A stretch of DNA of 64,000 bases from the NCBI GenBank assembly GCA_051294905.1, contig CM119380.1, positions 20,646,001-20,710,000 on the forward strand, written 5' to 3'. The translations under genes were made by a program, and so were the position numbers. This DNA comes from Botryllus schlosseri (taxonomy: Eukaryota). Below, in pieces: positions 3,078 to 50,056 of this stretch; position 1 is the first letter of the stretch; each line of letters begins with the position of its first letter. The notes under the pieces were generated by a model. It did no database searches. It saw only the letters and a program-made list of their open reading frames with translations, and was not told where the DNA came from.

Positions 3078-5498
3078 TATATCTTCACGTATGATTTCGG
3101 TGGTTGTGATCAAGAGACGATGCCGACGATACCTTTCTCCTACAACGCTATTCCTTGTAAAATCTCAATGGACTTGGAACTCGACTTGCTGTTTAGTAAA
3201 GAGAGCACGATTTATCCAAGACGTAATGTGATGATATCGCATTGCTCCCTATGGGATACGTGCACATTCTTGAAGAAGACATCATCCACGCTTCGAACTA
3301 ATGAAACACAGCCTCTTGTTTATTGTGAGGCACGAAGCAGCTCTGCTGTGAGTCACCATCATACTCTCTCTACAGTTGCAAAAGGTGTAGATATTACATG
3401 TACGCCGTTGTGTGGTGTGGCAACTGAGTATCTTCAATCAATTCGTAGGAGCAAAGGAACAGAAGATTCAGAGTCTTGTCCTAGTACTTATACAAGTCCT
3501 GCGTTAGACAAAGTGATATCTTTTTGCTACATTGCGTGTGTTCGACCAGCTATTGACTGTATAAATAACTGTCCTTCTACGATGGGAGGTTGCTGCTGTG
3601 GGCTTCGGAAATCCAACGATGGCGCTCAGGATACATCGGAGATATTGTACTTCCCCTCGGACTACCATCGCTTTGTGCGGCATTCCGTTCCCGCGACAGA
3701 TGAATTAGTTCGGAAAAGGCGCAATGACTGTCATACAGCCCGCAGTGAGAGTTACATAGGACACGAATCAAAGCTACAACAACAGGGATGCTTGACAATG
3801 CCAAAAGATTTTTGCGTACTTCAGAAAAGTGCAGAAGATTCGAATGTTCCATCCACAAGAGATGACGGCTCACACCGATGTATAGTGAATGCGGATGATA
3901 CGATTAAGGAGGCTCCATGTCCCGTTACTTCTAGAAGCAGAAGTATAGAACCGCTTATTGTAGAAGAACAGTTTGGTGAATCATATTATCTATGGCTCGG
4001 CGTTCAGCATGAAGTAGCAGAGGATTGCGTTTCCCAAGATAAAGTACAACCTACCTCGCCTGTCAAACTATCCAATCAAGAAAACTTTTTCCTTTGTAAA
4101 GATCTTACTGATCCACGATGCTCTGTAGAATCAAATATTGCTTCCTGTACAAAAAATCTCGAAGTCACCAATTCTGAAGTGTTTATATCGCAGTTTAGAA
4201 ATACTGGAGATATTAAAGCAGAAATGAGTCGCACCTCTTCACTGCCAAATGAAGATACTGCCATTGATTTTGAAAAAGGGACATTCCATGATGATCACAG
4301 CAATGTTCTCATACGCGACACCCCTTTGGTAACATGTATCACTTCTGTATCGCATCCCACTTTAAAGAAACGTTACCTAGTGACTGAAGCATGGAAAAAA
4401 GGTTTGCTTGATTATGAAACGGCGGTGATACTATTGGAAGGCCAAATCCAAGCTGGTGGTATTGTGTCTATAGGGCCGTCTATTGTCGAAAAAGCACCCT
4501 GCCTTCATTTAGTCTCTGTGGTGGAAGCAAAACGTAAAAGCTTGATCGATACGAAGATGTATGATAGACTGAAACTCTTCGAGGACTCTGTAAAATGTGT
4601 TATTGCCGCTTCCCTGGAAGGTACTAGTAAATATAATTCGAAATCGAAGACTCAAATGCGGATGGTGCAACTACAATCTAATTTAGGAGGTATTATGGAC
4701 TTTACAAAGCTGGAACTTGTGACCTTGTCTGCCGGCGTTGAAAAGGGTTTGATCAGCGATGACATTGCTGTTGATTCTTTCAATAGACAAATTGTCAGTG
4801 GTGGTATCGTAAGCAGACTACCATTAAGTAGGCTACCTTTATCCGAAGCGGTGAATTCCTGTTTGATATCTCAGGAACATGCTGAAACTATGAAGCCTGT
4901 CGAGTTGCTATATCAAGGCATCGTCGACCCAATTTCTGAAGAAGGCACCACCTACGCAATGTGCGTTCGCAAAGGGTTGGTAACCAGAGAGGCGGTGGTT
5001 GATTTTCTATTTAAACAAGCCTTGCAACATGGAGGCTGGATCAGGAATTGCTTCACAAATGAGTGGCTGCCGATCTCTCGCGCAATGCATGAAGGAATGA
5101 TCGACATCAGCATGTGGACCGCTGTGGAACAAGCGTTATCGCAAAATAAGCAAGAAGCATCGTTGATCCATCCGTTTTGGTTGAGGCCAGTGTCATATTT
5201 TGACTTTCTGAAATCAGCAAATACAGAAGATGGGGACTTATCACGGTGCAAAGTAATCAGCGCTTGCGATATGTTCGATGGGATGTACGATTCTAGAAAT
5301 CAAGAAAGGATCTCCATTTTTGAAGCATTGAGAAGGGATATGACCGATCAACTCACAGCCAAACGCCTATTAAAGGCACAGTTAGACAGTGGAGGGTTGG
5401 TAGATATTGAAAACAAAGAAAGAATCCCGGTCAGTACAGCTTTAACCAGACAAGTTATCGATTTTCCGATGGCGATTTCTCTTGTGCAACAAGGCAAG
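3078..5498 (+). CDS. MACF1: Giant exon (807 codons): disordered Ser/Cys-rich segment followed by plectin (plakin) repeats
   Basis: Pyrimidine tract plus CAG acceptor at 3077, phase 0; open frame to donor AAG|GTAAGT. Plectin-repeat signatures include AWKKGLLDYETAVILLEGQIQAGGIV and LLKAQLDSGGLVDIENKERIPVSTALTRQVID. The ORF track starts at ATG 3120. Confidence 0.85.
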
Positions 5499-5746
5499 GT
5501 AAGTTATCTCGCATTTTTTAGGAGGTGAGTCTACTTTATGCATTAGTAAACACTAAACACTAATCTCTTGCTGTAGGCAACTGTTGCTGGTAATTTACAC
5601 TAAACTGAACACGTGCAGGTTTAGATTTCCTATACTTCCATGCATGTATCTTTTCGCAATTCGTGCACGTTACGATCGCTTTATATTCTACATTTATTTC
5701 CGAGTAAATATTTTCGGATCATGCAAACAATATGTATTAACACCAG

Positions 5747-15304: not shown

Positions 15305-15499
15305 AGTTTGAATCCGTTTCGCGACTGGCTGGAAGGCGCCACGGAAAGTATCGCGCCCGGCAAGACTCTGCCTGCCGAAATAGCGGCCTTGCAGGACCTG
15401 CAAAAGGACACCGCCGCTTTACAGAGCGAAATCGCGTCGCGCAAGGCTGACCTGAGATACTTGGGCATGACTTCCAAACGATTCACCGATGCTGCAAAG
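15305..15499 (+). CDS. MACF1: Spectraplakin rod exon
   Basis: SLNPFRDWLEG...KADLRYLGMTSKRFTDAAK; phase 0-0. Confidence 0.9.
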
Positions 15500-15569: not shown

Positions 15570-15686
15570 ACTTACAACGGCAGCCTATCGGGTGACGGTC
15601 AACGGCCTGAATCGGACCCTACCGAAGATGCGGTGGTGGCAGTGATGAAAGACACGGAATCTAATTATAATGACGTCACTGAGAAG
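15570..15686 (+). CDS. MACF1: Spectraplakin rod exon
   Basis: TYNGSLSGDG...ESNYNDVTEK; phase 0-0. Confidence 0.82.
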
Positions 15687-15703
15687 GTTCGTGTTTTGAA
15701 TTG

Positions 15704-15900
15704 TAGCGGTGGTCAGTAACGAAGTACTTGAAATTTCTCGAAATACTCAAGTAGGCTTTAAGTAGTTGTACAACTTCCTCAAGGGTTTATGATTGTAAAC
15801 TGACGGTACCTATACTTATAATTAACGATTTTCGGTTATTTAAGCAAAAGTACGCCTGCAATACTTACTTTTTCACTTACTAAGAAATAGCTGCTTTTAC
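15704..15900. repeat. Interspersed family C (end CAGAGGTGGTCAGTAACGAAGTA; TACTCAAGTA/TACTT-rich); other pieces at about 12500-12593, 13428-13530, 17807-17915, 28140-28937, 38505-38600, 39794-39900, 50712-50950 and 59255-59500
   Basis: Recurrent terminal motif and its reverse complement TACTTTGACCACC(T/C)CT; boundaries approximate. Confidence 0.65.
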
Positions 15901-16870
15901 TTGTATATGTTTAAACAATACCGGATCCGACTGCCGCGGATAAGTCCTAGTATGCCCCGAAATCGCGCGGATTCTGTCTCAGATACAACTATTAAATCAT
16001 CTTTGCGTGAGGCATAGTTGGTTTACAATATATCCGTCTACCATCTATTTCGCATTTGACTTGCCGCTTACATTTGTGCGATACTGTCGGTTACAACGAG
16101 TGCGACTCCGCAGAGTGTAGCGTCGCGTGGGTAGAAATAATCTACTATTCAACTGTGATTTTCTGTTAATGGCGCTGCGGGCCAGTCGAGGATCTAAACA
16201 ACGTAGGTGTGCGAATATTGGCTCTTCATGCGGTTTCGCACGCTGCGCAGAGTCGCCGACGGAGTATCCACAATGCCTTTAGCACAATGTCAACACGGGA
16301 CACGTGATTTCGCGCTCCGAGATATTTCCCGTCATTTCATACAGGCTTGATATATTGCTGGTGTCGTACCCGTGACTAGAGGAAGAATTCAATTATACAT
16401 TCCGACTGCGTAATCACGGCCCTATCGTCGCGTGTATTGTAAACTTTATTGACTCTAGATCTCAACCGCTGGTCCTTGTAGACTTTTCCAACCCGCCAAA
16501 TGTACCACTGCCGTCGGACACTTGTCCATTATTTACAATTGATTTCGAAATATGGAACGTATTTATCTGCATCTAGTCGTAATGTAGAGTTCGTGGTATA
16601 CTTCGGGCTTAGCGTACGTCACAGTACAGCAAGTGTTGTGCCAAACTATTTAAGAGATTGGGAGATCCTACTTGGTCGTTTCGGTATCCTACTATCGGTT
16701 CATTACGTGACATAGTGTTTAGTGTATCGCATTGTACATTGTGCGGGTAAAAATAATAAAAACGCCGAATATACCTACTATTAAGGAGCCTAATATGTGT
16801 TTATGACGAGCTAAATGTAAAAGTTAAGATAACTTTTTAAAGAAAATTCAGTCGATTTTGAGAGTATAAC

Positions 16871-17049
16871 CATAGTGTCCTGCAATGGTGCGGACACAAG
16901 CAAATCGCACGGCTCACTGCGATTGATTTACGTCACGCTCTCCATTTGGCTAAAGGCAATTTTGACAGTAATTTTTGAAAAGTGTAACGTAAATCAAACG
17001 CATTCAGGCGTTAGATTTGCTTGTGTCCACACCATTGTAGGACACTATG
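16871..17049. mobile_element. Internally deleted copy of the CATAGTGTCC foldback family
   Basis: Same termini; 7-bp TSD GTATAAC/GTATAAT; inserted into an older repeat also seen near 35100-35400. Confidence 0.8.
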
Positions 17050-20000
17050 GTATAATCTAGCGACATTTGCCCGTATAATAGAGATAAGCAAACAGCAAAG
17101 TTGCAGTTCTTTCCAAAGAAGCCGAACAATCAAAAGCTAGCCAGTGATTTTCACCAGGACTTCGTCGTGAAGAAACTTCAATAAAACCACGTATAGCATC
17201 AATAACATCAAAAAGATAGCAGCAAATCTCTCATTAAACCGAAGTTTTCCCAATCTTCTTTTATGTTGCACACGCCGTAATTACATTTTGGGTTGATTAT
17301 GCCTTTTGAAGGTTCGCCGGCCCGCAAAATTCGTTTTGTAATAATACTGGTACACAAACTGAAAAGGTTGATAGCAACTGCTCTGAATTCCGAAGAATGT
17401 AACGGCTGCGAGCAATAGGCGGCGCATTGTACGTTGTGTGGCGTCGCAACCCGCCGTTTTCAGCCGGTTATTAATGCGAGCGGTCAGGTATAACATCTCT
17501 GACTTCCGATTCGCACCTGAAATCTGTGCGGCTATTCGTATAATATTGTGTCGGATAACGCCGTGTCTGCATCGCATTGGGGAGATTATAGTAATACGTA
17601 GTACTCGAGCTTCTGCTCAAAGTGTCGGATTTCCGATACGGTTTGCCATCGCAAGATTGCTGGATCCTGACGTCACGGGGATTTTGATAAAGCCCGGGTA
17701 TCTGATTAGGAGTGTGGTGAAGTTGGATGGTGGCTATTGAAAAATTATCAAGCAAGCCCTTGTATGAATGATGCGCTTTTGATGCCATTGGTTTACTCAA
17801 CAGTTTTCAGTGGTTGTAACTTTTGACAAACGCGACTATACTACTTGTACATTGTACAATATACGGGAGTAGAACTCAACTAGTAGAACCAACGCTGGCT
17901 ACTTTGACCACCTCTGAGGATTAGTGCGTAACCTGTATGGTCAAGGGGTATCGCCTTCCCACCGTTAAAATGATTCGTGTTCACTTGAATACCACCAGCC
18001 GTCACAGTGTCAGATCAGCTTTTAGAAACGCGCCGTAAACAAGCTTTCGATGCATATTCGTGTCAATATTCGTCTCCGTGCGCGCGGCGTCTTTTATCCA
18101 GCCGCACACATGCATGCTATTCCATCTCATTGTCAGCGTTGGCACTGTTATCTCGAACATCTTCTCCGCGGTTCGGGGTCGGCGCCGTTAGACTGAGATC
18201 GCAATGCTGCGCGCTTTTCTTCTGATATTGACCCTTTTTCGCGGGTCAGCGCGCGGGCATAAACAGAAAGGCTAAACCCGCAAAACGACTTTGCTTTTAC
18301 GGCCTGTGTTAATGCACATGCGAATCCACCGCAGACTGGTTGCTTTCATAGCATCGTGTGTGCGGTTATTGTGCGAATAATTCTCAATCTTATTTAACAA
18401 ACCCGTTCCCCGATTGTTGGGTGTTGAAATGTAGCCATTGTGACATTGCTTCGTGCTTATAGCGATAATTATCGTTCTCTTCTGATATTATCGTGCACAA
18501 ACTAGGAAGTATTTTAAATACGAAATATGGGCGCGGCTTGAAATATAAGGAGGTGTTGCGCGAACGGCTTGCTTTAGTTATTACGTGACTGATCGTGAAG
18601 TAGTCGTGTCGTTTTGGTGCGTTTTGGCAACTCCAGTTGTTGTTATATGGCTGAGGCGGTCCTTGGATATATGAGAATATTGAACATGCGACGCAATAGC
18701 GTCCGACACTTGATTATAGGGTTAAAGTTCGTGGTTGGGCCAGGTTCTGGTTAGGGTATGTTTTTAAGTTATAATGGCGCATGCTCAAAGGTCGGTCAGA
18801 CGACTGATAGACTCTTCTGTATAATTGGAGTTCAAGATAGTATTTGCTTGTTCATTGCCTGCTATATCCACCTACAATCATTATCGTTATTTGACACATG
18901 AAAATACATAAGACTTTGTGGCTTCCGTTACATTGCCAGGCTATCAGAAGTCTGTGTCCGGGGTAAGCGGGGTGCGCCACAGATACACTGCGACGTGAAA
19001 AACTGGTGTTGTGTGACGTCACAACATCGAAAATTCTATGTCTGAATAGGACAATGAAGGACGCCTATACCGCTTGCTATTCGTCAAACCATGAAGGGGA
19101 TTAAACATCGGGCGTTTCACCATCAGAGCTGCACAACTAGTATATTCTCAGCTTTTTTCCAAATTGATTACAAGTAAAATTATAGCTACATAGTTTTTTT
19201 CCAAATTAGTTGAGATTTAGAATTACTAAATTCGCGACAACTTGGAAATTAAATCAAGTTCAGTTCCTCTCAAATCAGGGTTCACTCTGATGAAGCAAAA
19301 ATACTGGCAAATAACTGTACAGCAAGCTTGGCTTGTTTCGCACCATTCAGTACTCCATTTTGAGGAAAACCAAAAATTCGATTGAAATTGGAGCAAAGAA
19401 ACATTTCAAAAATTACATTAGTATTATAATCAGAGCAGAGAAATATTTCACAAATGAAATTAGACTACGGGCATATCGTATTGTAATTAGACAGCTAGCG
19501 TTATCTGGTTAGCCAAGTCTGTTCACCACCCCTATTCGGGTCCATTACGCTCAAGTCTGGTTGCGTGCGCGATTTGTTGCAACGTTAACACCGACCGTGT
19601 GTTCAATTAGTCATCGCTGTCCGACGTTGAGCAGGAAACTTCGAATTCGATATCTTGCACGTGATTGCACGCATGCTAATTAATCCTAATCCCTAGTTTA
19701 GTCGGGACTATCGATATTAAGCGTGAGATAACCTTACTTCTTATCTTATTGCAATCGGACACCCCGACTCATCGATAATAATCCTGTTATGTGAAACCGA
19801 TGCTCTGGAATTTTCCCCAACTTGGGTAGGCGTATTCTCGCGACGCATGCCCTAACTAAAACATTGTTTATACAATACCCGTTTGAGTTTGAGCAGATAT
19901 GAAACGATGAATAGATCGAATTATTTTATAAACAATCGTTCCGCCGCTTCTTTGTTACATCCCCCTCTGCGTATTATTGTCTGCGCAGTTATACTGCGTG

Positions 20001-23000
20001 CGGCACCGGCAGAGAGTTTGAAATTGGACATAATGTATCGAGTGGAGTGTCCAACTGTGTAACTGTAAGCGTGGGTGATGTTGTGTTCAAGGTACAGCGA
20101 ACTCTATTAACCTTACGACCTTTCCTGCCTGCTATTGAGCTATTCGTATTACGCGCGGTGAACTTAAGATGTTCCTATGTTGAGTTATAAAAATTCAGAA
20201 GCGCAGTTAATTGACAATAGTGCGTTATTCGCGTGAATACTTCCAGTTCTTTGGAGCATTATTTTTAGCCTTCATTGCTTTGCTGAAATCCAGAAATGAG
20301 TAGTACCTCATCATTCGTTAATATCAGTTTGTTAGCTTCGGGATTTTGCGATAGTGACGCCAGTCAGCTATAGTTTCAAGTCCGGTACGATTGTAATGTG
20401 TTCGTATTTACGAGAACACCACACACGCAAATCGTCTATCGACTCAATCATGTAACTAATAGTTACTAATTATAGAAACTTGGATTACCACATACAGCGC
20501 TTCGAGCAGTAGCACACAAATGGTCGTGAATTAATGATCATTTACCATGGAATACAGACGTACATTCGTATAAGAACAGTTGCTTGTGTATTTTTCATTA
20601 CTTATCAATGAGGGTAATGAAAGAGTGAGTACAAAAAAAAATCGCATTTAACATCGCGGGTTGGATAGCGCGTTACCGGTTGATATAATAGCTTTGCAGT
20701 ATTATCACCTTAAAGTTAATATCCCGTCACGTTGGCGGCTTAAATAAATACTATTCACGTGCTGCGACGCAGGCTTATCGTGGGAAGCAGGCGAAAAAGG
20801 TTGATGTGTCCGTGAAGCATAATTCTCTTCACTGGGTATGAGAACTGTTTGCCGGAATTCGCTGCGCGGCTCCTGCGCTTTAGCCGCGGTTTCTTGTGCA
20901 TGGCCCATAATCGATTTGAAGTGATAAGGTGTTTTAGCTGCGAATTGTAACCGGCAGGTGGCATTGACGGAGGTGTTGATGAGCTGCTGATGATATATAT
21001 GCGTTAATTGTATAACATGCGCAATGTATACCGTGTACATATGCACACAGTGTAACTTCGTGGTATAGTGAAGACGAGCGCAGGTTTTCTTCAGCATGTA
21101 TGAGATGTATTGTTAATATCCGCGAGATATTAATTTTGTCTGGTGAAGTATGCATTATCATTTCAGTATAGCAATTTAGTTCATTTTGACGTGAGAGTGA
21201 AGTGTATCATTCTTGGGTATTATTGGATTAGTCTCGCTTAGTTTGAGTACTGATCCACTGGTTGTCATAAAATTTTGTGTGTGTCGGACATTGCATAACT
21301 GTAGAGATTGAGGCCAGGTTCTACAAATCGATTTAAGTAATTGAATGGCAGATGTCTTGATTTTAAATTGATAATAGTCACCCTATGTTAGGTCCGAAGA
21401 GAGTGCGGAGTTCTGCCAACTGTGTCAATACCAATACGTAATCTTCGCGTTACAACACTCTCTGCGAACAAGACATCTCCCACTTTATCCGCGTCGCAGA
21501 TTGTTTCGATTTTGACATATGAATATCTCGGATGGGAAGGTCTTGAACTATAAAGGCAGTAGCTCAGATAGGGCCTAATCGCATATTGCCAGTATGTGAG
21601 AGTTGTGGGTCACTTAACAACTTAACGGAACAGTAATTATGTATCATCCGTGTAGCTTATTTTGCGATGGCACTGCTACAGATTCATAAGGTATAGCTTT
21701 AGCTAAAGAAAATCGGGGTATGTAATTTTCGAGAAACTATGACATCATAGTATCTTATCCGAATTAGGATGAATTCATATTGATGCGTATCCCCTACCCT
21801 GAATAACACACGTGCTGACGTGCATCAACCCCATACTCTGACAATGTCGATAGTGTCCCACATTCACTTTTTAGCGATCGTGTCCTGGATTTATTCACGG
21901 ATGCACTTGCTTCTGTTTTACGAGTGTTTAATTCATGCGGGTGGAATAAAATGATTCAATTTTCTATTTTCCTCCGAAAAAATTGGGAATTTGTGATTTT
22001 TAAGTGTACTAACTTTGAAAATATGTCGGTCAACGCGAAATTTTCTTCGATTTTGCAAGACTTGAGCACGCGCCGTTTTTTGTCACATTTTAGTTTCGCG
22101 ATATTAGTCTTTTTGAATCAGTTCATCGATTGAGATGTAGCAGATATATCTCGTTGGTTTAGATTGCTCTCCGTATCCATAGTTACGAGTATCATGCATG
22201 ATCGCGCACCAAGCGTGCTCGGGTGTCGTTAATCTCCTCGTCGAATTGTAAATGCACATTGCACAATCGTATAAGGAGCCAACGCCATGATAGCGGCCTA
22301 TTTACGATCGCAATCGAACTGTAAACATAGCAGGCGGTTTTTCATGTCCACATCTGATCATAATATGGAGATTTGACTTTTTTGTATACTGCGATTCGTT
22401 ACTCGCTTAATCGATTGTAATTGTTTCGGCGTCGCTACTTTTATAGCCTAATTGTTTAATTATATTTGAAATGGTTGTAATATCGCTACTGTATTTGTAT
22501 AACGCATAGTCACCATTCCCAACTCCGATAAATGACCCGGCTCCATATAAAAGTTCTTGATAATTCGAACCTTGTAACGTTACCGCCCGTATCATATTTC
22601 GTCGTTAGACGTTCATTGTTCATTGCCGCATGGACTCGACTTTCAAATATTTTGTGTCCTCGAGAGGTGAAGGCGTTGTACGATTTCGCTTGTACCTCAT
22701 GAAGTAAATACCGCATGTCACGACTGTGAAATCATGCGAAAAAATAGACGCGCGTCCGTCCACGTCTATCGGTATATTTCAATTTTTGTATCGCGAAGAA
22801 AAACTATCAAATTTTGCCAAAAGCAATGTCACGATAATGAATTGTTAACATCGGTAAATATGATGACACTGTAAAAAAAAACGAACCCCTCGTCAGCTGT
22901 TCGTTTGTCTCTATGATTGATGGCCGCGCAATTTGCGGTACGAATGTCTTTTGAAGATTGTTGTGACCAGCAACTGTCAAATTGGAGTCGATTGGATGCG

Positions 23001-24262
23001 CTTGCAAACCTGTAAAAACCAGACCGACGGGCTCTGATAATAATTTGCTGTTGCATTGCCGCGTATCGATAATTTTGCCTGACGACCTTGTTTCGGTACC
23101 CCGTAACATTCCGATGGTATCGTTGCAATACTGGTTTATGAAGTATCAATCGCTCCAGTGAAGATGTGATTGTGGGCATGAAGTGTGCGGGAAATATTGC
23201 TTGTCAGCACGCACCGCAGTCAAGTGCATGTAGTGATGATGTCAAAGTGTTAACTGCAGCGAAGTGATGTACGAGGCTTAGCAGTGCTGAGTGATATATA
23301 CCAAAGGTGCCGCTTCATACTATTTTATGCTATGTTGTGGTACTGCATTATATTAAAGTATGACAGGGATGTGCATAATTTCGTGTAGAAAAGTTTACTC
23401 GAAGAAGGCAACAAATAGTGCGCGACATGTTTTTCAACGGTCCTTTGAGATATCAGCAATTGAGCAATGAGCATGCGACATTTCAGCATTTGGGTCGACG
23501 TTAGTGCTCGGTCAGTGTTAGGGCGGTGGTTCTGAGCGAAGACCTATATCACATTACCAATCTAATCCTTTACTGTAGAATACGCATTGAAATGTATATT
23601 AAAGTTCTGTGCCCCAAAATGTATCTTCAAATACCGGCACATAAAATGTGCATTTCAACACAGAACAAGAGTAAAACTATCGAAACATGATTCTGACCTA
23701 AAACAAAAAGAACATAATGTGACTCCTTCCGTATAAGACAAGTAGTATGTTTTGACCACTAGACCATCGTACTAGGGTTAGGGTATGCGTTAATTTTGGG
23801 GTTGTAAAGTCTAGTGTGCCGATTTCACCTGTCGATTTTCATTGCGTCGCAATGTCGCATGCTCAGATGCCGGGCAACCAGTACCAATCCCCCAATATTT
23901 CCAGTATAGCATTAGTCAGTCTTCTGTTTGGGCGACACAACGCAGTTTCCGAACCACTGGAAACTGTTGCTCGACATTTGAGCATGATACGCTGTTTTAT
24001 TTCATGGACAGAAAACTGTTTACTGCTGCTGTTTACTGCCGTCTTGACAATGTATCATTACATTATCGGGAAAGACCTAGAAATTAATCCGCCTGCGTGA
24101 CCATTCTAAACAGTTCATTTCCACCGCCGTAACATCCGTATCGAATACATTCAGCGCGATTACCGTAGCGTTATACACGATAAGCGTCCGCAATCATACC
24201 TACTCTGACATGCCCTAGTTGAACCGTCGCAAGCGTTTCGAGGGCAAAAGCGCGCGGTAAAC

Positions 24263-25054
24263 ATGGGAAACTCGTGCTGCAGTTGCCGCAAGGCCACCGA
24301 CGTGATAGGCGATGACATTCTCGAAGAGCGGCCGCACAAAGAAAAGAGAAAAATCCGGAAGAGAAAACGGAAATACAAACCCGCCGAGACTTCCGGTCCG
24401 GGCAAAGCGCTGTTACGTAACAACGGCAACGGCCAGTCACCGGTTGTATTAGAAGAGAAAGCCGAGAACTGTTCTGGCCAACCTTCCAAAAGAAGCTCGG
24501 ACGGGTCATTCGATAACGCGGTGTTTGTCCCGGATAAGTCCCTCGTTGATAACGTCATGAAATCCACTCCCGTGACTTCATCAACCGTAAATAAAGCCGA
24601 AAACGGGAAAACCATGACTCTGGGCAGTTACATGGAAGTTAGCGACATGGGGACTCAGTTATCGCCTGAGGCCGGTTGCTACGCGACGCAGGAACCGGAG
24701 GGAACCGGTTTTGCGAGTACTCCGGCTGACGCGGAGTATCCGTTCGCGCACAAACCCGGAGTTAAACCCGAAAAATCAGGCGGTAAATTGAGAAATAGCC
24801 ACTGTGATAACACTGTGAATTCGTACCCCTTCCTCGTAAACTCTTCAAGAGATATACTGGCGGAGCGCGCTATGTCTAAGAAGCTGCGCGCCGCCGTTAA
24901 CATGAAGTTTGTGACCCGCGGCCTGCGCGTGCCGGTTTATTACGTAATTGATGACGTCGTAGACGGCGACGATGACTCAAATTCGAAGAAGACCATGACT
25001 TTGCCGCGCGAGGACGAAGAAGACGAGGGTATCGACGCTACTGGGTTTAGCGAA
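24263..25054 (+). CDS. MACF1: Alternative first coding exon (264 aa) with N-terminal MGNSCCSC acylation motif and polybasic stretch
   Basis: AAACATGG start context; in-frame TGA at 24206 upstream; donor GAA|GTAAGG phase 0 matches acceptor 25550. Confidence 0.8.
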
Positions 25055-25549
25055 GTAAGGCAGCGGAATAATGCCTTTATGCTGGGCCCGAAATGCATAC
25101 TTTTTTACTTGGGAATCGCGACTTTTATACTTGGTCTACGACAGTCATTCGTTAGGCATTAGACAAATCATAATAATCGTGATCGCATTAAGCGGTTCTA
25201 TATTTTATACGCTCAACACACACACGATATACGATGCGATACAATTAGCAGCGACCGCACGTAATACCGGAAATCAAATTCTCTGTAAATGCAGGGACTA
25301 TTTTGTCCTTGGGACGTAATAATGTCGAAAACAACCAACGATATTCGAGTACCAACCACTTCGACCTCATCTTGCGTGCGAGTTGGCGTTCTCGCGATAA
25401 TCTTTACGAAACCTGATTCTTACATATGTCTGTGAGAAAGTTAGCGACATCTCTTCCTTACGTTACGTTATTTGTACCGTTGTGGACAGCATATTCCAAC
25501 GGGCCACTGTAAAACTCGCGCCTCGCTCTGCAATGTGGATTTATTTCAG

Positions 25550-25705
25550 GCTCGCGAGAAGGAACACCTGTTGGCCGAGGTGCTGCGGAAACGCGCCACT
25601 TTTGAGGCCTCCAAGCCGAACGTGTACCCGTGGTTGGACCGCGCCGAGGAAACTCTGCGGGCCATCGAGCAGAGACCGTTGCCGGTGGAGCCTAACGCTT
25701 TGCAG
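25550..25705 (+). CDS. MACF1: Spectraplakin rod exon
   Basis: AREKEHLLAEVL...VYPWLDRAEETL; phase 0-0. Confidence 0.88.
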
Positions 25706-27232: not shown

Positions 27233-27383
27233 GTGCAATCGCGAGAAGTGGAGAATCTCCTTCGTGACGTGGACGGCCACGCTCCAGCCGTTGAGGCGCT
27301 TGAAGATGCTGCGCGCGAAATGGTAGCGCTACCGTCGGAGGCTGTTGATAAGGCTGAGAAGAAAAGCATCTCCGAGCTATCAG
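27233..27383 (+). CDS. MACF1: Spectraplakin rod exon
   Basis: VQSREVENLLRDVDGHAPAVEAL; phase 0-1. Confidence 0.87.
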
Positions 27384-27844: not shown

Positions 27845-28056
27845 AATCCACCCGCGAGAGACACGACAAACTGCGTCACGGCGCTGCTAAGAAAGTGACT
27901 GAGCTATCTTCCGCGCTATCGCAGTCCCAGGGTGTCTCCGAACGGCTAGAGTCACTCCTACACTGGCTGGCAGACTGGGAACGGAAGCTGGACCACAACA
28001 GGGCCGAAACGGTCGCGCAGGAAGGAAAAGTCGCTGCCAAGCTGACTGAGGCTAAG
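27845..28056 (+). CDS. MACF1: Spectraplakin rod exon
   Basis: ALSQSQGVSERLESLLHWL; phase 1-0. Confidence 0.88.
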
Positions 28057-29211: not shown

Positions 29212-29538
29212 CAAATTAAAGACGCAGTAGCTGCCCGGGCTTCCGACGTAGACGAAGTGAAATCGGCGTGCTCCGCCATCTTGGGCGGCGGCGACAGTCA
29301 AACCACCGACTCTCTGCACAAGAGGCTGTCTAAGATGAGCGAGCAGTTCGGTCAGCTCGAGCACGCGGCCAAAGAAAGAAACATCGACTTGGAGGATATG
29401 AACGGGAATTTGGGCGAGTTCGAGCGCGAATGCAAGAGATTGTCGGACTGGATCGAAGACACTTTTGAGACGGTCGGAGATGATGACGTTTCCAAAGTGC
29501 CGGAAAGCGAGATTCCTGTCTTAGAGAAGAAAATCGAG
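29212..29538 (+). CDS. MACF1: Spectraplakin rod exon
   Basis: QIKDAVAARASDV...KRLSDWIEDT; phase 0-0. Confidence 0.88.
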
Positions 29539-46318: not shown

Positions 46319-46684
46319 ATGTTTTCTTACAATAAAAAAGTGCGATTGAAACCGTACGAAGTCCTGCCGCTGTCTGATTTCCACGTTGACCCCGACGCTC
46401 CCCCGCTGCGCATGCGCGCGCGCCCCGGGAAGATGTTTGCCTCGCACAGCAGGGCCGATCTAGCGCACGATTTCAACTCGCGCAACGAAATGGTGGCGCC
46501 CATGAACTTGCGAAGGCCCAAATCCGCGATGGAACTTTCCGACGCGAGCGCGCGAGATTTCGAGTCACGTGACTTCCGTTACGTCGCCGACGGCGTGCAC
46601 GACGAAATCGCGGAGAGCTCGAAAGAGCTGATCGAGTGCTTGCCGAAAATGACGGCTGTCAAGCCAGAGAAAAAGGAAGAGAGC
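46319..46684 (+). CDS. Nested cassette exon 1 (initiating; MFSYNKKVRL...)
   Basis: GCCATG start; in-frame TAG at 46310; upstream acceptor TTTCAG at 46295; donor AGC|GTGAGT phase 0. Confidence 0.75.
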
Positions 46685-47373
46685 GTGAGTATCTATCAAT
46701 CGGCCCTGTTCGGTTCGCAGTAGCTACGTAGATGGTACGAGAATGCGCCGGATATTACCGTGGTTTCTAATTTCTGCCTCTCTCAATATCTAATATTTTG
46801 TGTGCTTACGGAAACTAGACAATTCACAGTGTCTCGAATATTCGTTTTTTATCAATTCCTGATTGCAGAATAGTGATTTCGATATAGCATTTCAAGGTGG
46901 TATCTATACCGATGTTAACAATTTCCCCGGCTTTATTCGCATCAACTCATGATTCTAAATTCTCTCTCCAATTCTCTCTACAAGCGATATTATCTTAAAC
47001 TAGAGTTGGTCTGTAACTCAATTAGGTTAGGCTTACCTACTCGCGCTACCTGCGCAATTAGTTATAATTTTAGACTACACCTACTTCTATACATTTTAGT
47101 TTGCGGTTTTTTAGGCAAACCTAGGACTACTTTCATTGAAATCGATGATTTTACTTCACCAATAATTAGTTGCGTTACGTTATAACAGAGTACAATTGAG
47201 GAATAACAATTTAGCTACCTCTGTCAATAACGGTGTATTGTAATTGCGGTACTGGTAGTGTCTGTCAAGCATATCGGCCCATATGTTACGCTCGAAACGA
47301 CAATGTAACGGAATTTCGATTTTCTCTTTACAAAATGCTGTGATTATCACCGACTACATTTCCACATCTTCAG

Positions 47374-47465
47374 AAAGATTCGTTACCTTTGGACACACCG
47401 GCAACCGCTACGCGCGATTGCATGATGGTATATCCACAAAACACGGTGCCGATGGCTAAATACAG
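47374..47465 (+). CDS. Nested cassette exon 2
   Basis: CTTCAG|KDSLPLDTP...MAKY; phase 0-2. Confidence 0.62.
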
Positions 47466-47532
47466 GTGTGTATCCACACCGCGTACTACCAGTAAAGGTG
47501 TAAATCACACGCTAATCATGGGTCCTTCGCAG

Positions 47533-47719
47533 AAGGAAAATATCCGGCGAGTTACCGGATAGTGACGATGATGAAGCTCCTATGACCGATGCACAAAGGT
47601 GGAGCAAAGAGAAAACGCTTGAGTCCGAGTATAATCCTGGAAAAAACTCTCGCCGGAAGCGAAAACCGAGTCTATGGGCGGATCCGGATCCGGATGGAAA
47701 AAAGGCTTATGACCTTAAC
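47533..47719 (+). CDS. Nested cassette exon 3
   Basis: RKISGELPDSDDDE...KKAYDLN; phase 2-0, after a 67-nt intron. Confidence 0.65.
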
Positions 47720-47778
47720 GTATGGTGTTATGGTATTATTAATAAAGTTGAATATTACTAATAGCAATTTGCTATCAG

Positions 47779-47941
47779 GATCAAATACAAAAGCCTACTT
47801 ACATGGGTGAAGAGAGTATGGATGGCGAGACTATATCCACCCTGATCAATAAAGGATCTCGCCGAAAATCGTTCGCTGCCATAGGCACCATGGTGGCGAA
47901 ACTGAAAAAACGCAGGCAATCGGCCGGATATGACGAAAAAG
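47779..47941 (+). CDS. Nested cassette exon 4
   Basis: DQIQKPTYMG...RRQSAGYDEK; donor G|GTAAGA; phase 0-1. Confidence 0.7.
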
Positions 47942-48197
47942 GTAAGACTTGTCCGCAGAGGTAGACCAAGTAATCGTCGTTGGTGGTGAGGGAGAAGTAA
48001 CGACCTAGCGAATTTCCAAATAAGTGTTCTAGGCCTAGTTTTGGCTAAAATCATAGTCACTTAGTAAGTAGTGTAATTAGTCAATACATACTTGAGTGCA
48101 CCGAAAAAATATAGGTACTTCGTTCCTGACCGGTGATCACCTTTGCTCGTCCGTCCATTCAAAAAGCTTTTACATATACTGACATTATTCTTTTCAG

Positions 48198-50056
48198 ATG
48201 CCGACGAAATTTCAATTGTCGAACCCAAGAAACCCACAGTCGTGAAATTCAACATTCCGGACGACGAGGGTGGCAAGGCTTCCTCTGTATCTAACGAACA
48301 CACTCCCACCGAGGACTTGAGCAAAGTCGATTTGACTATGCCCCCTGCGCAATTCATGGACACCAGCACGATGATATCTTACAGCGAAACGCTGGTGCAT
48401 AGAATCGTTAACGACCGCAGAACCCCGGAAAACGTACTCAGTTTTCCCGCGCCGGCTCCGGTTATCACCCCGGCTCCGGTTTTCTCGCTATCCGCCATCC
48501 CAGAACACGACCGCGCCGAGACGGTCACTCCAAAAAACGCGAACGCACCGGTTTTTATCCGCCCGCCGGAGTCTCCGTTTGATAAATCCGATGACGCCAT
48601 CAGCGATGACGATTTATCCAGCGGGCGCCGCTCGCGGCGTCATAAGCGCCAGCGCAGTCGTGGTTACAGCCGAAATTACGGCAGCACGGCTGAGTTGAAT
48701 GACCCTGAATCCGAGAGAGAACGGCGCAAGCGACGCGAAGCGAAGCGTCTACACAGCGCGAAACGCGAAAGCGAGCGAGCGCGCGTGCAAAAGAGAAAAA
48801 GTTCGCGCAAGTCTCGCCGGCGCGGTAGCGATGTGAGAGAGAAAGTACGCCTTGACCGTCTAGATCGCGCTAAATCAGAGCGCAGAGATAGCAGCGAATC
48901 AACGGAGGAAGAGTCCTTTTTTAAATTTGCCTCCTTTCTAAAAGGCGGCGACGCCAAGTCTTCAGGCTTGAGCAAATCTGAGTCGTTCGCTATAGAGAAC
49001 ATAGCCCGCAAACTTATCAATCTCGTACAACAGAACGGCGATGCTAACGCGGAAGTCGGCACCGATTCGGATGTAGCCTTAATAGGGAAAGATACGGCTA
49101 CTCCAGTGCCACATCAAGCACAGTCCAATTACAATACAAACATGATCGATAATGTAGATTCAACGCCGCTGATTCAAAACACAGTACAGTCAGACGCTCA
49201 GTCTGTGAGCACCAACTCGAATTGGCAACAAAATCAGAATTTTAACACGCCTAGCCGGCAACCGTCTATAACAGCCAACCCCGCGTGTCCTACAACTTCT
49301 CTCGTCACCGTAGTAAAACCGGACGACCTCCTGTCCGTCGCTGATATTTTCGAACCGAGAGACGGCGCCACACTCAAAACGGTCGTCCGCTTGCCGACCC
49401 TGCAACCGCGGGAAGGCGAAAACGAGGCCGCGCTACGCAGTAGGGTTGAAGATTTTCTAAACGGAAAAACGGAAGAGGGCGACTCGCATTTTCAGCAGGT
49501 ACCCGGCAGACGTTGGGTCGCGGAGTGGGCCAGGCGTGAGGAAGTGATAGGCAAGGCTGCCGAACGCGCTGAAAGCAAAAAAATCAAACGCAAACGTAGT
49601 TCTATCACGCGAAAACGCAGTATAAAGCGCAGCCCTTCAACCAACAGCATCGGCACCTTTTTCAGTAAGCTGTTCGGTAAATTACGCATTGATGAAGATA
49701 CCTCGGAACACAAAAACACGGAAGTCGTGGCCTGTGTTTACGCTGTCAATGAGAACGACATCACGCGACGTAATGACGTCACAATACCCGCTAGCACACA
49801 ACCAGTAGTAACCCCGGCGGCAGATACATCGACGTATGTAAACGCGCGTGGCAACGCTAGCACACAGCAGCCTATGTTGAATCGCTCTGTTTCTAAAGTC
49901 ACGTTTTTGGATGAGATAGCCCGCAGTAAAGATTCCGGGGTGTTATCTGACATGGGGCTTGAATCTGTGGATGAATACGGGCGGAGTCAAATCAAGTCCG
50001 GTGGCCCTACGCGACCTTGGGCGGCCGGAACTGGGCAGAGACACGGTATACGTTAA
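48198..50056 (+). CDS. Nested cassette exon 5 (terminal; disordered, Arg/Lys/Ser-rich)
   Basis: TTTTCAG|AT phase 1; 619 open codons to TAA; AATAAA at 50159-50164. Confidence 0.78.

What the first reader, a model, noticed from the sequence alone, without database searches (positions are those of the whole stretch)
24155..25054. Intronic first exon MGNSCCSC + polybasic stretch splicing straight into the spectrin rod
Seen: strong start context AAACATGG, in-frame TGA at 24206, 264 codons, donor GAA|GTAAGG phase 0 matching acceptor 25550. N-terminus MGNSCCSCRK followed by HKEKRKIRKRKRKYK. The predicted product has a dually acylated head, about 45 downstream rod exons and, presumably, the EF/GAR microtubule-binding tail, but no CH, plakin or plectin domains.
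Basis: partly seen in the sequence, partly recalled or inferred. Interest (0 to 1): 0.8.

Follow-up and report, generated by a model that had tools for sequence, protein, structure and literature searches.

The report
Lipid-anchor-type alternative first exon, spectraplakin rod
A 264-codon open reading frame inside a 9.9-kb intron of a sea-squirt spectraplakin (MACF1/dystonin-type) gene is a real coding exon, kept in the same place in two other species. It most likely starts a shorter protein whose membrane-anchor-type head is joined directly to the spectrin rod, but no RNA data could be reached to show the splice.

Summary
The sequence facts hold. The start ATG is at 24263, with an in-frame TGA at 24206. 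The exon has 264 codons. Its donor, GAA|GTAAGG, follows 25054, and the phase-0 acceptor is at 25550. The product begins MGNSCCSCRK, with a polybasic stretch at residues 25-39. Only the stated start coordinate (24155) is loose.

The exon lies at the 3' end of the intron 15687-25549 of a plus-strand spectraplakin gene. Plectin repeats lie upstream and spectrin-rod exons lie on both sides.

Only two relatives exist among 1.84 billion representative proteins. Both come from genomic contigs of other species. Both start MGNAC..C followed by a polybasic run, have an in-frame stop just upstream of the ATG, and end at a GTAAG donor at the same aligned codon. One contig carries the orthologous rod exon 645 bp downstream, followed by four more collinear rod exons. 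Conservation starts at the ATG and stops at the donor; the flanks are unalignable.

The head is predicted to be disordered and carries four conserved motif islands.

Still inferred: the splice itself, an internal transcription start, acylation, and the EF-hand/GAR tail, which lies outside the window.

A myristoylation-type head is already known for dystonin-a3, and isoforms lacking the actin-binding domain are known for Shot. This is therefore a new variant of a known kind. The scan has separately noted two further acylation-type starts in the same gene.

The parts
15305..15499 (+). Constitutive rod exon, phase 0/0, upstream of the host intron
   Evidence: Acceptor tttcag|AGT and donor AAG|GTACCT read. 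Pfam Spectrin E = 5.7e-4 on this fragment.
15570..15686 (+). Last constitutive rod exon before the host intron. Its phase-0 donor (GAGAAG|GTTCGT) is the inferred normal partner of acceptor 25550.
   Evidence: Joined to 25550, it reads ...YNDVTEK|AREKEHLL... without a stop.
15687..25549 (+). Host intron of 9.9 kb. No other coding-like plus-strand segment lies between 15.7 and 24.2 kb.
   Evidence: Codon-usage scan. L001 likewise has no recognisable rod exon in the 5.7 kb upstream of its copy.
24206..24208 (+). In-frame TGA 19 codons upstream of the ATG
24263..25054 (+). Alternative first coding exon, 264 codons
   Evidence: Homologs P0001 and P0002. pN/pS is 0.33-0.54 with synonymous sites saturated.
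24263..24286 (+). MGNSCCSC head. Gly2, Asn3, Cys5 and Cys8 are invariant in three species. It is a myristoylation/palmitoylation-type motif.
   Evidence: Alignments. The PROSITE-type pattern was checked by eye.
24335..24379 (+). Polybasic stretch HKEKRKIRKRKRKYK (residues 25-39), present in all three species
24497..24535 (+). Conserved island SDGSFxNxVFxxD (residues 79-91)
   Evidence: Invariant columns
24629..24691 (+). Conserved island Y-x-EVSDMGTQ...YATQ (residues 123-143)
24902..24943 (+). Conserved island MKFVT[KR]G[LM][KR][VI]PVY (residues 214-227)
25019..25048 (+). Conserved acidic island EDEGIxAxxF (residues 253-262), ending two codons before the donor
25055..25060 (+). Splice donor GTAAGG. 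It is the only GTRAG in the whole ORF. GTAAG sits at the same aligned position in L001 and L003.
25055..25549 (+). Inferred 495-nt intron with no AATAAA or ATTAAA and no conservation with L001's 645-nt intron
25550..25705 (+). Rod exon, phase 0/0, that would receive the alternative first exon. It is 61% identical to L001 7554-7715.
27233..27383 (+). Next rod exon
27845..28056 (+). Next rod exon
29212..29538 (+). Next rod exon, with a Pfam Spectrin match (E = 2.5e-6)

Best explanation
24263-25054 is a conserved alternative first coding exon of an ascidian spectraplakin gene.

A transcript that starts inside the 9.9-kb intron 15687-25549 is translated from ATG 24263. It is spliced from the GTAAGG donor after 25054 to the phase-0 acceptor at 25550. 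The transcript could come from an internal promoter, possibly with spliced-leader trans-splicing, which ascidians use.

The product has a 264-residue disordered head in place of the CH, plakin-domain, plectin-repeat and first rod exons. The head is followed by the remaining spectrin rod.

The head starts with Gly2, a substrate-type site for N-myristoyltransferase. It has invariant Cys5 and Cys8, candidate S-palmitoylation sites, and a polybasic run 20 residues further on. The likely mechanism is therefore two- or three-signal anchoring to the inner face of a membrane, most likely the plasma membrane, as in Src-family SH4 heads and as proposed for dystonin-a3.

If the transcript runs to the usual 3' end, the isoform would tether the microtubule-binding tail to membrane without any actin-binding domain.

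Shown: the ORF, its conservation, the conserved start, donor and position, and phase compatibility. Inferred: transcription, the splice, acylation, the membrane target and the C-terminal tail.
For: - **ORF and splice signals.** They are as described.
- **Host gene.** Plectin repeats lie at 3120-5528 (Pfam E = 1.4e-24). Spectrin fragments lie on both sides of the intron.
- **Homologs.** Only two exist in 1.84 billion representatives. Both are MGNAC..C plus polybasic at the N-terminus.
- **Start.** In-frame stops lie 2 codons (L001 and L002, the same species) and 9 codons (L003) upstream of their ATGs. All have A at -3 and G at +4.
- **Donor.** The donors are GAC|GTAAGC and GAT|GTAAGA at the same aligned codon as the window's GAA|GTAAGG. 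The ORFs then stop after 2, 8 and 35 unconserved codons.
- **Position.** L001 has the orthologous rod exon 645 bp downstream behind a pyrimidine-rich acceptor, and then four more collinear rod exons.
- **Selection.** pN/pS is 0.33-0.54 while synonymous sites are saturated.
- **Flanks.** No upstream or intron conservation was found. The plus frame scores higher than the antisense frames in tblastx.
- **Unique donor.** The proposed donor is the only GTRAG in the ORF, and the short intron has no poly(A) hexamer in either species.
- **Open reading.** Exon 1 spliced to the next four exons gives 546 codons without a stop.
- **Disorder.** AF2 gives mean pLDDT 44 and no secondary structure, consistent with a disordered head carrying short motifs.
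- **Precedent.** Dystonin-a3 has a putative myristoylation domain and a plasma-membrane location (PMC3279385, PMC3308695, PMC3352950).
Against: - **No RNA evidence.** The exact ORF is not on record. No transcript-derived protein of 145-745 aa containing the exon was found. A search anchored on the receiving rod exon found nothing.
- **No promoter signal.** No conserved core-promoter motif was found, and there is no distinctive CpG signal.
- **Imperfect motif in one species.** The L003 head (MGNACRC) has Arg where the PROSITE-type myristoylation pattern wants a small residue. The polybasic run would also fit a nuclear localisation signal.
- **Few species.** Only three are available, so the conservation statistics rest on few independent lineages.
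- **Unknown 3' end.** The 3' end of such a transcript is unknown. A non-rod cassette at 46.3-50.1 kb could end it early.
Confidence: 0.62

Rival explanations
1. A separate, nested single-exon gene. The ORF would be translated to its own stop, giving a small acylated disordered protein of 299 aa in this genome. It would merely sit in the spectraplakin intron on the same strand.
For: The only database proteins for it, P0001 and P0002, are unspliced ORF calls, and no spliced product was found. The conserved protein ends in an acidic motif that could serve as a C-terminus.
Against: Those calls are mechanical ORFs on genomic contigs. The sequence after the conserved boundary is unconserved, and the stop lies 35, 2 and 8 codons away. 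The boundary itself is GTAAG in all three, including the free third position of the would-be Val codon. No AATAAA or ATTAAA precedes the rod exon in either species with that interval. The position 0.5-0.65 kb upstream of the same phase-compatible rod exon is conserved.
Confidence: 0.13
2. A real alternative first exon spliced to the rod, but the head is not a lipid anchor. The polybasic run would act as a nuclear localisation signal or a nucleic-acid or microtubule-binding patch, and the Cys residues would serve another role.
For: KRKIRKRKRKYK fits a classical nuclear localisation signal by inspection. The L003 head fails the PROSITE-type myristoylation pattern at position 6. No acylation predictor or assay was available.
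Against: M1, G2, N3, C5 and C8 are invariant across species saturated at synonymous sites. This is the pattern expected for a co-translational Gly2 modification plus nearby palmitoylation. Two of the three heads fit the pattern. A second start in the same gene has a similar head, MGGCCCGLRKSND.
Confidence: 0.15
3. A chance ORF, a transposon remnant or a 'poison' cassette exon, with no protein product of its own.
For: No Pfam family matches it and the predicted structure is disordered.
Against: The ORF is kept open for 264-418 codons in three lineages, with conserved motif islands and unalignable flanks. Only two relatives exist in 1.84 billion proteins, which is unlike a transposon. In L001 the in-frame stop is 2 codons before the ATG with no AG between them, so it cannot be entered in frame from upstream.
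Confidence: 0.03

Closest known systems
Dystonin/BPAG1 isoform 3 (dystonin-a3/b3), mouse and human
   Same: It is a spectraplakin isoform defined by an alternative first exon. The unique N-terminus carries a putative myristoylation motif said to anchor it to the plasma membrane (PMC3279385, PMC3308695, PMC3352950).
   Different: The vertebrate head precedes a CH2 domain, the plakin domain and the full rod. Here the head would join the rod downstream of the plectin-repeat exons, so there is no actin-binding or plakin module at all. Sequence homology between the two heads was not tested, because no reference sequence was available through the tools.
Drosophila Shot D-type isoforms, and the human KIAA0754/MACF1 entry
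   Same: They are N-terminally truncated spectraplakins made from internal start sites. Shot D-type lacks both CH domains and probably the plakin domain (10.1101/122010). UniProt O94854 (KIAA0754) shares a MACF1 rod peptide (PMC13167194). From memory, it is listed as MACF1 isoforms that start at an internal exon.
   Different: No acylation-type head is described for them in the texts read. The start sites are at other positions in the gene. No homology to this exon was detected in any search.
Dual-acylation SH4-type heads (Src-family kinases, G-alpha subunits) and myristoyl-plus-polybasic switches (Src, MARCKS)
   Same: Met-Gly start, Cys within the first eight residues, and a basic cluster nearby. 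This comparison rests on general knowledge, not on a tool result.
   Different: This is a motif class, not a homologous family. Here the basic cluster is 20 residues away from the Cys pair, and the head is 264 residues of disordered sequence with four further conserved islands of unknown partner.
Internal-promoter isoforms of dystrophin (Dp260, Dp140, Dp116, Dp71)
   Same: It is a giant gene of the spectrin superfamily in which unique first exons inside introns splice into rod exons, giving products that lack the actin-binding head. This comparison rests on general knowledge.
   Different: It is a different gene family, and those unique heads are a few residues long and not lipidated.

Membership tests
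Alternative first coding exon of a spectraplakin gene | Lies within a spectraplakin gene on the coding strand | tested here: met
   Plectin repeats are upstream. Spectrin fragments and collinear rod exons lie on both sides, all on the plus strand.
Alternative first coding exon of a spectraplakin gene | Opens with a start codon that cannot be entered in frame from upstream | tested here: met
   In-frame stops lie 19 codons (window), 2 codons (L001) and 9 codons (L003) upstream of a conserved Met-Gly-Asn.
Alternative first coding exon of a spectraplakin gene | Donor site phase-compatible with the next constitutive exon, and conserved | tested here: met
   Phase 0 to phase 0. GTAAG sits at the same aligned codon in three species. 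The spliced product is open for 546 codons.
Alternative first coding exon of a spectraplakin gene | Transcribed and spliced as predicted | not testable with these tools
   No transcript-derived sequence could be retrieved.
N-myristoylated, S-palmitoylated (SH4-type) N-termini | Gly at position 2 and a sequence fitting G-{EDRKHPFYW}-x(2)-[STAGCN]-{P} | tested here: inconclusive
   Gly2 is invariant. The window head (GNSCCS) and the L001 head (GNACSN) fit. The L003 head (GNACRC) has Arg at the fifth position. The pattern was recalled from PROSITE PS00008 and applied by eye.
N-myristoylated, S-palmitoylated (SH4-type) N-termini | Cys close to the myristoylated Gly | tested here: met
   Cys5 and Cys8 are invariant in three species.
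N-myristoylated, S-palmitoylated (SH4-type) N-termini | Lipid actually attached; membrane localisation dependent on Gly2 and Cys | not testable with these tools
   This needs metabolic labelling and mutants.
Full spectraplakin tail (EF-hand, GAR, C-tail) | EF-hand and GAS2-related domains at the 3' end of the same transcript | not tested
   Rod-like exons continue to at least 60.8 kb. The 3' end of the gene lies outside the window.
Ortholog of the vertebrate dystonin isoform-3 first exon | Sequence similarity of the heads and the same position relative to the CH2 exon | tested here: not met
   The position differs: this exon is downstream of the plectin-repeat exons rather than upstream of CH2. 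No vertebrate protein appeared among the hits. A direct alignment was not possible.

The most novel reading that the evidence does not exclude
The ascidian spectraplakin gene carries a set of internal first exons, each opening with a Met-Gly/Cys-cluster/basic head. They are this one, MGGCCCGLRKSND at 3582, and a Cys-run head noted upstream of the window. One giant gene would then produce a graded series of membrane-anchored products:
- plectin-repeat plus rod;
- rod only;
- perhaps an epiplakin-like form.

The rod-only form would be an actin-independent tether between membrane and microtubules. It would be a candidate for cortical microtubule capture in ascidian eggs and embryos.
Probability: 0.2. 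Interest if true: 0.65.

Novelty: new variant of a known kind. Interest (0 to 1): 0.45.

Why it matters
Spectraplakins are usually seen as actin-microtubule cross-linkers whose diversity comes from different N-termini. A conserved isoform that swaps the whole actin-binding, plakin and plectin front end for a lipid-anchor-type head would link membrane and microtubules directly. It would show that the myristoylated-head idea, known from dystonin-a3, has been used at a second, much more distal entry point of the gene.

It also gives a compact testable object. It is a 264-residue disordered head with four invariant short motifs whose partners are unknown.

The exon has been found only in three related species so far. 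This limits its general reach.

Tried and rejected
- **Transcript evidence, by three routes; all came up empty.** These were an exact look-up of the 299-aa ORF, homolog searches with the exon and with a three-species profile covering candidates of 145-745 aa, and a search anchored on the stop-free stretch around the receiving rod exon. Longer transcript-derived proteins cannot be excluded. The length filter hides them, and the representative library collapses isoforms.
- **Promoter.** No TATA, initiator or acceptor-like motif is shared upstream of the three ATGs. No upstream or intron blocks are conserved. CpG observed/expected is high over the whole 14-26 kb stretch, so it is uninformative.
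- **Pfam.** No family matches the exon.
- **ESM Atlas.** All hits score under 0.9. They include other N-terminally acylated proteins (herpesvirus UL11, AP1AR) at 0.59-0.68, too weak to use.
- **AF2.** The model is disordered, so no fold search was run.
- **Paralogy with the 637-aa ORF at 48143-50056.** None was found.
- **Identity of the two source runs.** It could not be established.
- **Read-through tail.** Its hydrophobic stretch (CILFYLGIATFILGL) looks like a tail anchor but is absent from both other species, so it was rejected as chance.

Full report
**Observation.**
- The start is ATG at 24263, in the context AAACATGG.
- An in-frame TGA lies at 24206.
- 264 codons run to GAA|GTAAGG after 25054.
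- The ORF continues to its own stop at 25160-25162 if not spliced.
- The acceptor ttatttcag|GCT starts an exon at 25550 in phase 0.
- The product begins MGNSCCSCRK and has HKEKRKIRKRKRKYK at residues 25-39.

The given start coordinate, 24155, is simply upstream sequence. Only three ORFs of this length or more exist in the six frames of the window, all on the plus strand.

**Setting.** Earlier notes of this scan describe the genome as a sea squirt related to Styela. I did not verify this independently.

The plus strand carries a spectraplakin gene:
- An 802-codon ORF at 3120-5528 has plectin repeats (Pfam E = 1.4e-24).
- Rod-type exons follow at 10.8-15.7 kb and from 25.5 kb to at least 60.8 kb.
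- The two exons before the gap are 15305-15499 and 15570-15686, both phase 0/0.
- Joined to 25550 they read ...YNDVTEK|AREKEHLLAEVL... without a stop.

The host intron is therefore 15687-25549, and the ORF sits at its 3' end, 495 nt from the acceptor. No other coding-like segment lies in that intron, and the ORF has the best codon-usage score in the 8.3-25.6 kb interval.

**Relatives.** An exhaustive HMMER scan of 1.84 billion representative proteins found two hits: P0001 (376 aa, E = 3e-23) and P0002 (426 aa, E = 1e-6). Two word-indexed searches, one with a three-species profile, added nothing.

Both hits are ORF calls on genomic Logan contigs. P0001 lies on L001 (9.8 kb) and L002, which are the same species in two runs. 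P0002 lies on L003 (2.3 kb).

- **N-termini.** The proteins begin MGNACSNCSK and MGNACRCCSRK. Each is followed by an acidic patch and a run of 12-14 Lys/Arg.
- **Invariant columns.** They include M1, G2, N3, C5 and C8, plus four islands: SDGSFxNxVF, YxEVSDMGTQ...YATQ, KFVTxGxxxPVY and EDEGIxAxxF.
- **Linkers.** The linkers between the islands differ in length. The exon is 264, 374 and 418 codons in the three species.

**Start.** In-frame stops lie 19, 2 and 9 codons upstream of the ATG in the window, L001 and L003. In L001 there is no AG between the stop and the ATG. All three have A at -3 and G at +4. This is a first coding exon, not a cassette.

**End.** At the same aligned codon boundary, two residues after the last invariant Phe, all three sequences read GTAAG:
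- window: GAA|GTAAGG
- L001: GAC|GTAAGC
- L003: GAT|GTAAGA

After that the frames stop at +35, +2 and +8 codons with no similarity.

It is the only GTRAG in the window's whole ORF. In L001 a pyrimidine-rich acceptor 645 nt downstream opens AHERECLLADVLRKR.... This is 61% identical to the window's exon 25550-25705, and four further rod exons follow in the same order. Neither short intron holds AATAAA or ATTAAA.

**Selection.** Synonymous sites between the three copies are saturated (pS 0.79-0.95). Non-synonymous differences are 0.31-0.49, giving pN/pS of 0.33-0.54.

The 1.5 kb upstream and the intron share nothing beyond chance 9-12-mers. Conservation thus begins at the ATG and ends at the donor. 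Plus-frame tblastx scores exceed the antisense ones.

**Product.** Exon 1 joined to the next four exons gives 546 codons without a stop. The head has no Pfam family. With the three-sequence alignment, AF2 predicts no secondary structure and a mean pLDDT of 44, so it looks like a disordered region with short conserved motifs.

By position, the product lacks the plectin-repeat exons, everything 5' of them, and about seven rod exons at 10.8-15.7 kb.

**Mechanism proposed.**
1. After Met removal, Gly2 is a substrate-type site for N-myristoyltransferase. The window and L001 heads fit the PROSITE-type pattern; the L003 head has Arg at the fifth position.
2. The invariant Cys5 and Cys8 are then in reach of membrane palmitoyltransferases.
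3. The basic run adds electrostatic binding to acidic lipids.

This is the logic of SH4-type heads, stated here from general knowledge. It is also what is proposed for dystonin-a3, whose unique N-terminus has a putative myristoylation domain aiding plasma-membrane anchoring (PMC3279385, PMC3308695, PMC3352950).

If the transcript keeps the usual 3' end, the result is a membrane-to-microtubule tether without an actin-binding domain. None of these steps was or could be tested here.

**What is missing.**
- No transcript could be reached.
- No promoter signal is conserved.
- The EF-hand/GAR exons are outside the window.
- I could not tell whether an automatic annotation of this or a sister genome already lists such an isoform. 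The searches cannot see giant proteins by one exon.

**Comparison with the known.** Spectraplakins are known for multiple promoters and N-termini. Shot D-type isoforms lack both CH domains and probably the plakin domain (10.1101/122010).

The human KIAA0754 entry shares MACF1 rod peptides (PMC13167194). This fits my recollection that it denotes MACF1 isoforms starting at an internal exon.

The kind of thing is therefore known. New here are the entry point, distal to the plectin repeats, and its combination with an acylation-type head.

**Same gene, other heads.** The ATG at 3582, inside the plectin-repeat ORF, opens MGGCCCGLRKSND. It aligns 7/13 with MGNSCCSCRKATD (E = 0.053 for the single comparison). 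The scan also noted a Cys-run head upstream of the window. I did not test the conservation of either.

**Verdict.** This is a real, conserved alternative first coding exon. Its splice into the rod is well supported by comparative anatomy but not by RNA. The lipid anchor is plausible but untested. It is a new variant of a known kind, of moderate interest.

Noticed in passing
window 3582-3620 (+), inside ORF 3120-5528: A second Met-Gly/Cys-cluster start, MGGCCCGLRKSND, lies just upstream of the plectin repeats. It aligns 7/13 with the head studied here. A TATAAATA lies at 3560-3567, only 15 nt before the ATG, which is too close for a standard TATA-to-start distance. The ORF upstream of it (3120-3581) does not look coding.
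   Followed up: partly
window 25055-25162 (+): The read-through tail of the ORF has a hydrophobic stretch, CILFYLGIATFILGL, that resembles a tail anchor. It is absent from both other species, so it is probably chance.
   Followed up: yes
window 46319-50056 (+): Long, non-spectrin, low-complexity coding-like ORFs (134 aa and 637 aa, with no Pfam family) sit among the rod exons on the same strand. They could be alternative exons or an alternative end for transcripts starting at 24263.
   Followed up: no
window 29212-29538 versus L001 8582-9010: One 327-nt rod exon in the window corresponds to two exons in L001, so an intron was gained or lost between the species.
   Followed up: no
window 24210-24218 (+): A minimal upstream ORF (ATG CCC TAG) lies 53 nt before the main ATG. 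It would be in the 5' leader if transcription starts further upstream.
   Followed up: no
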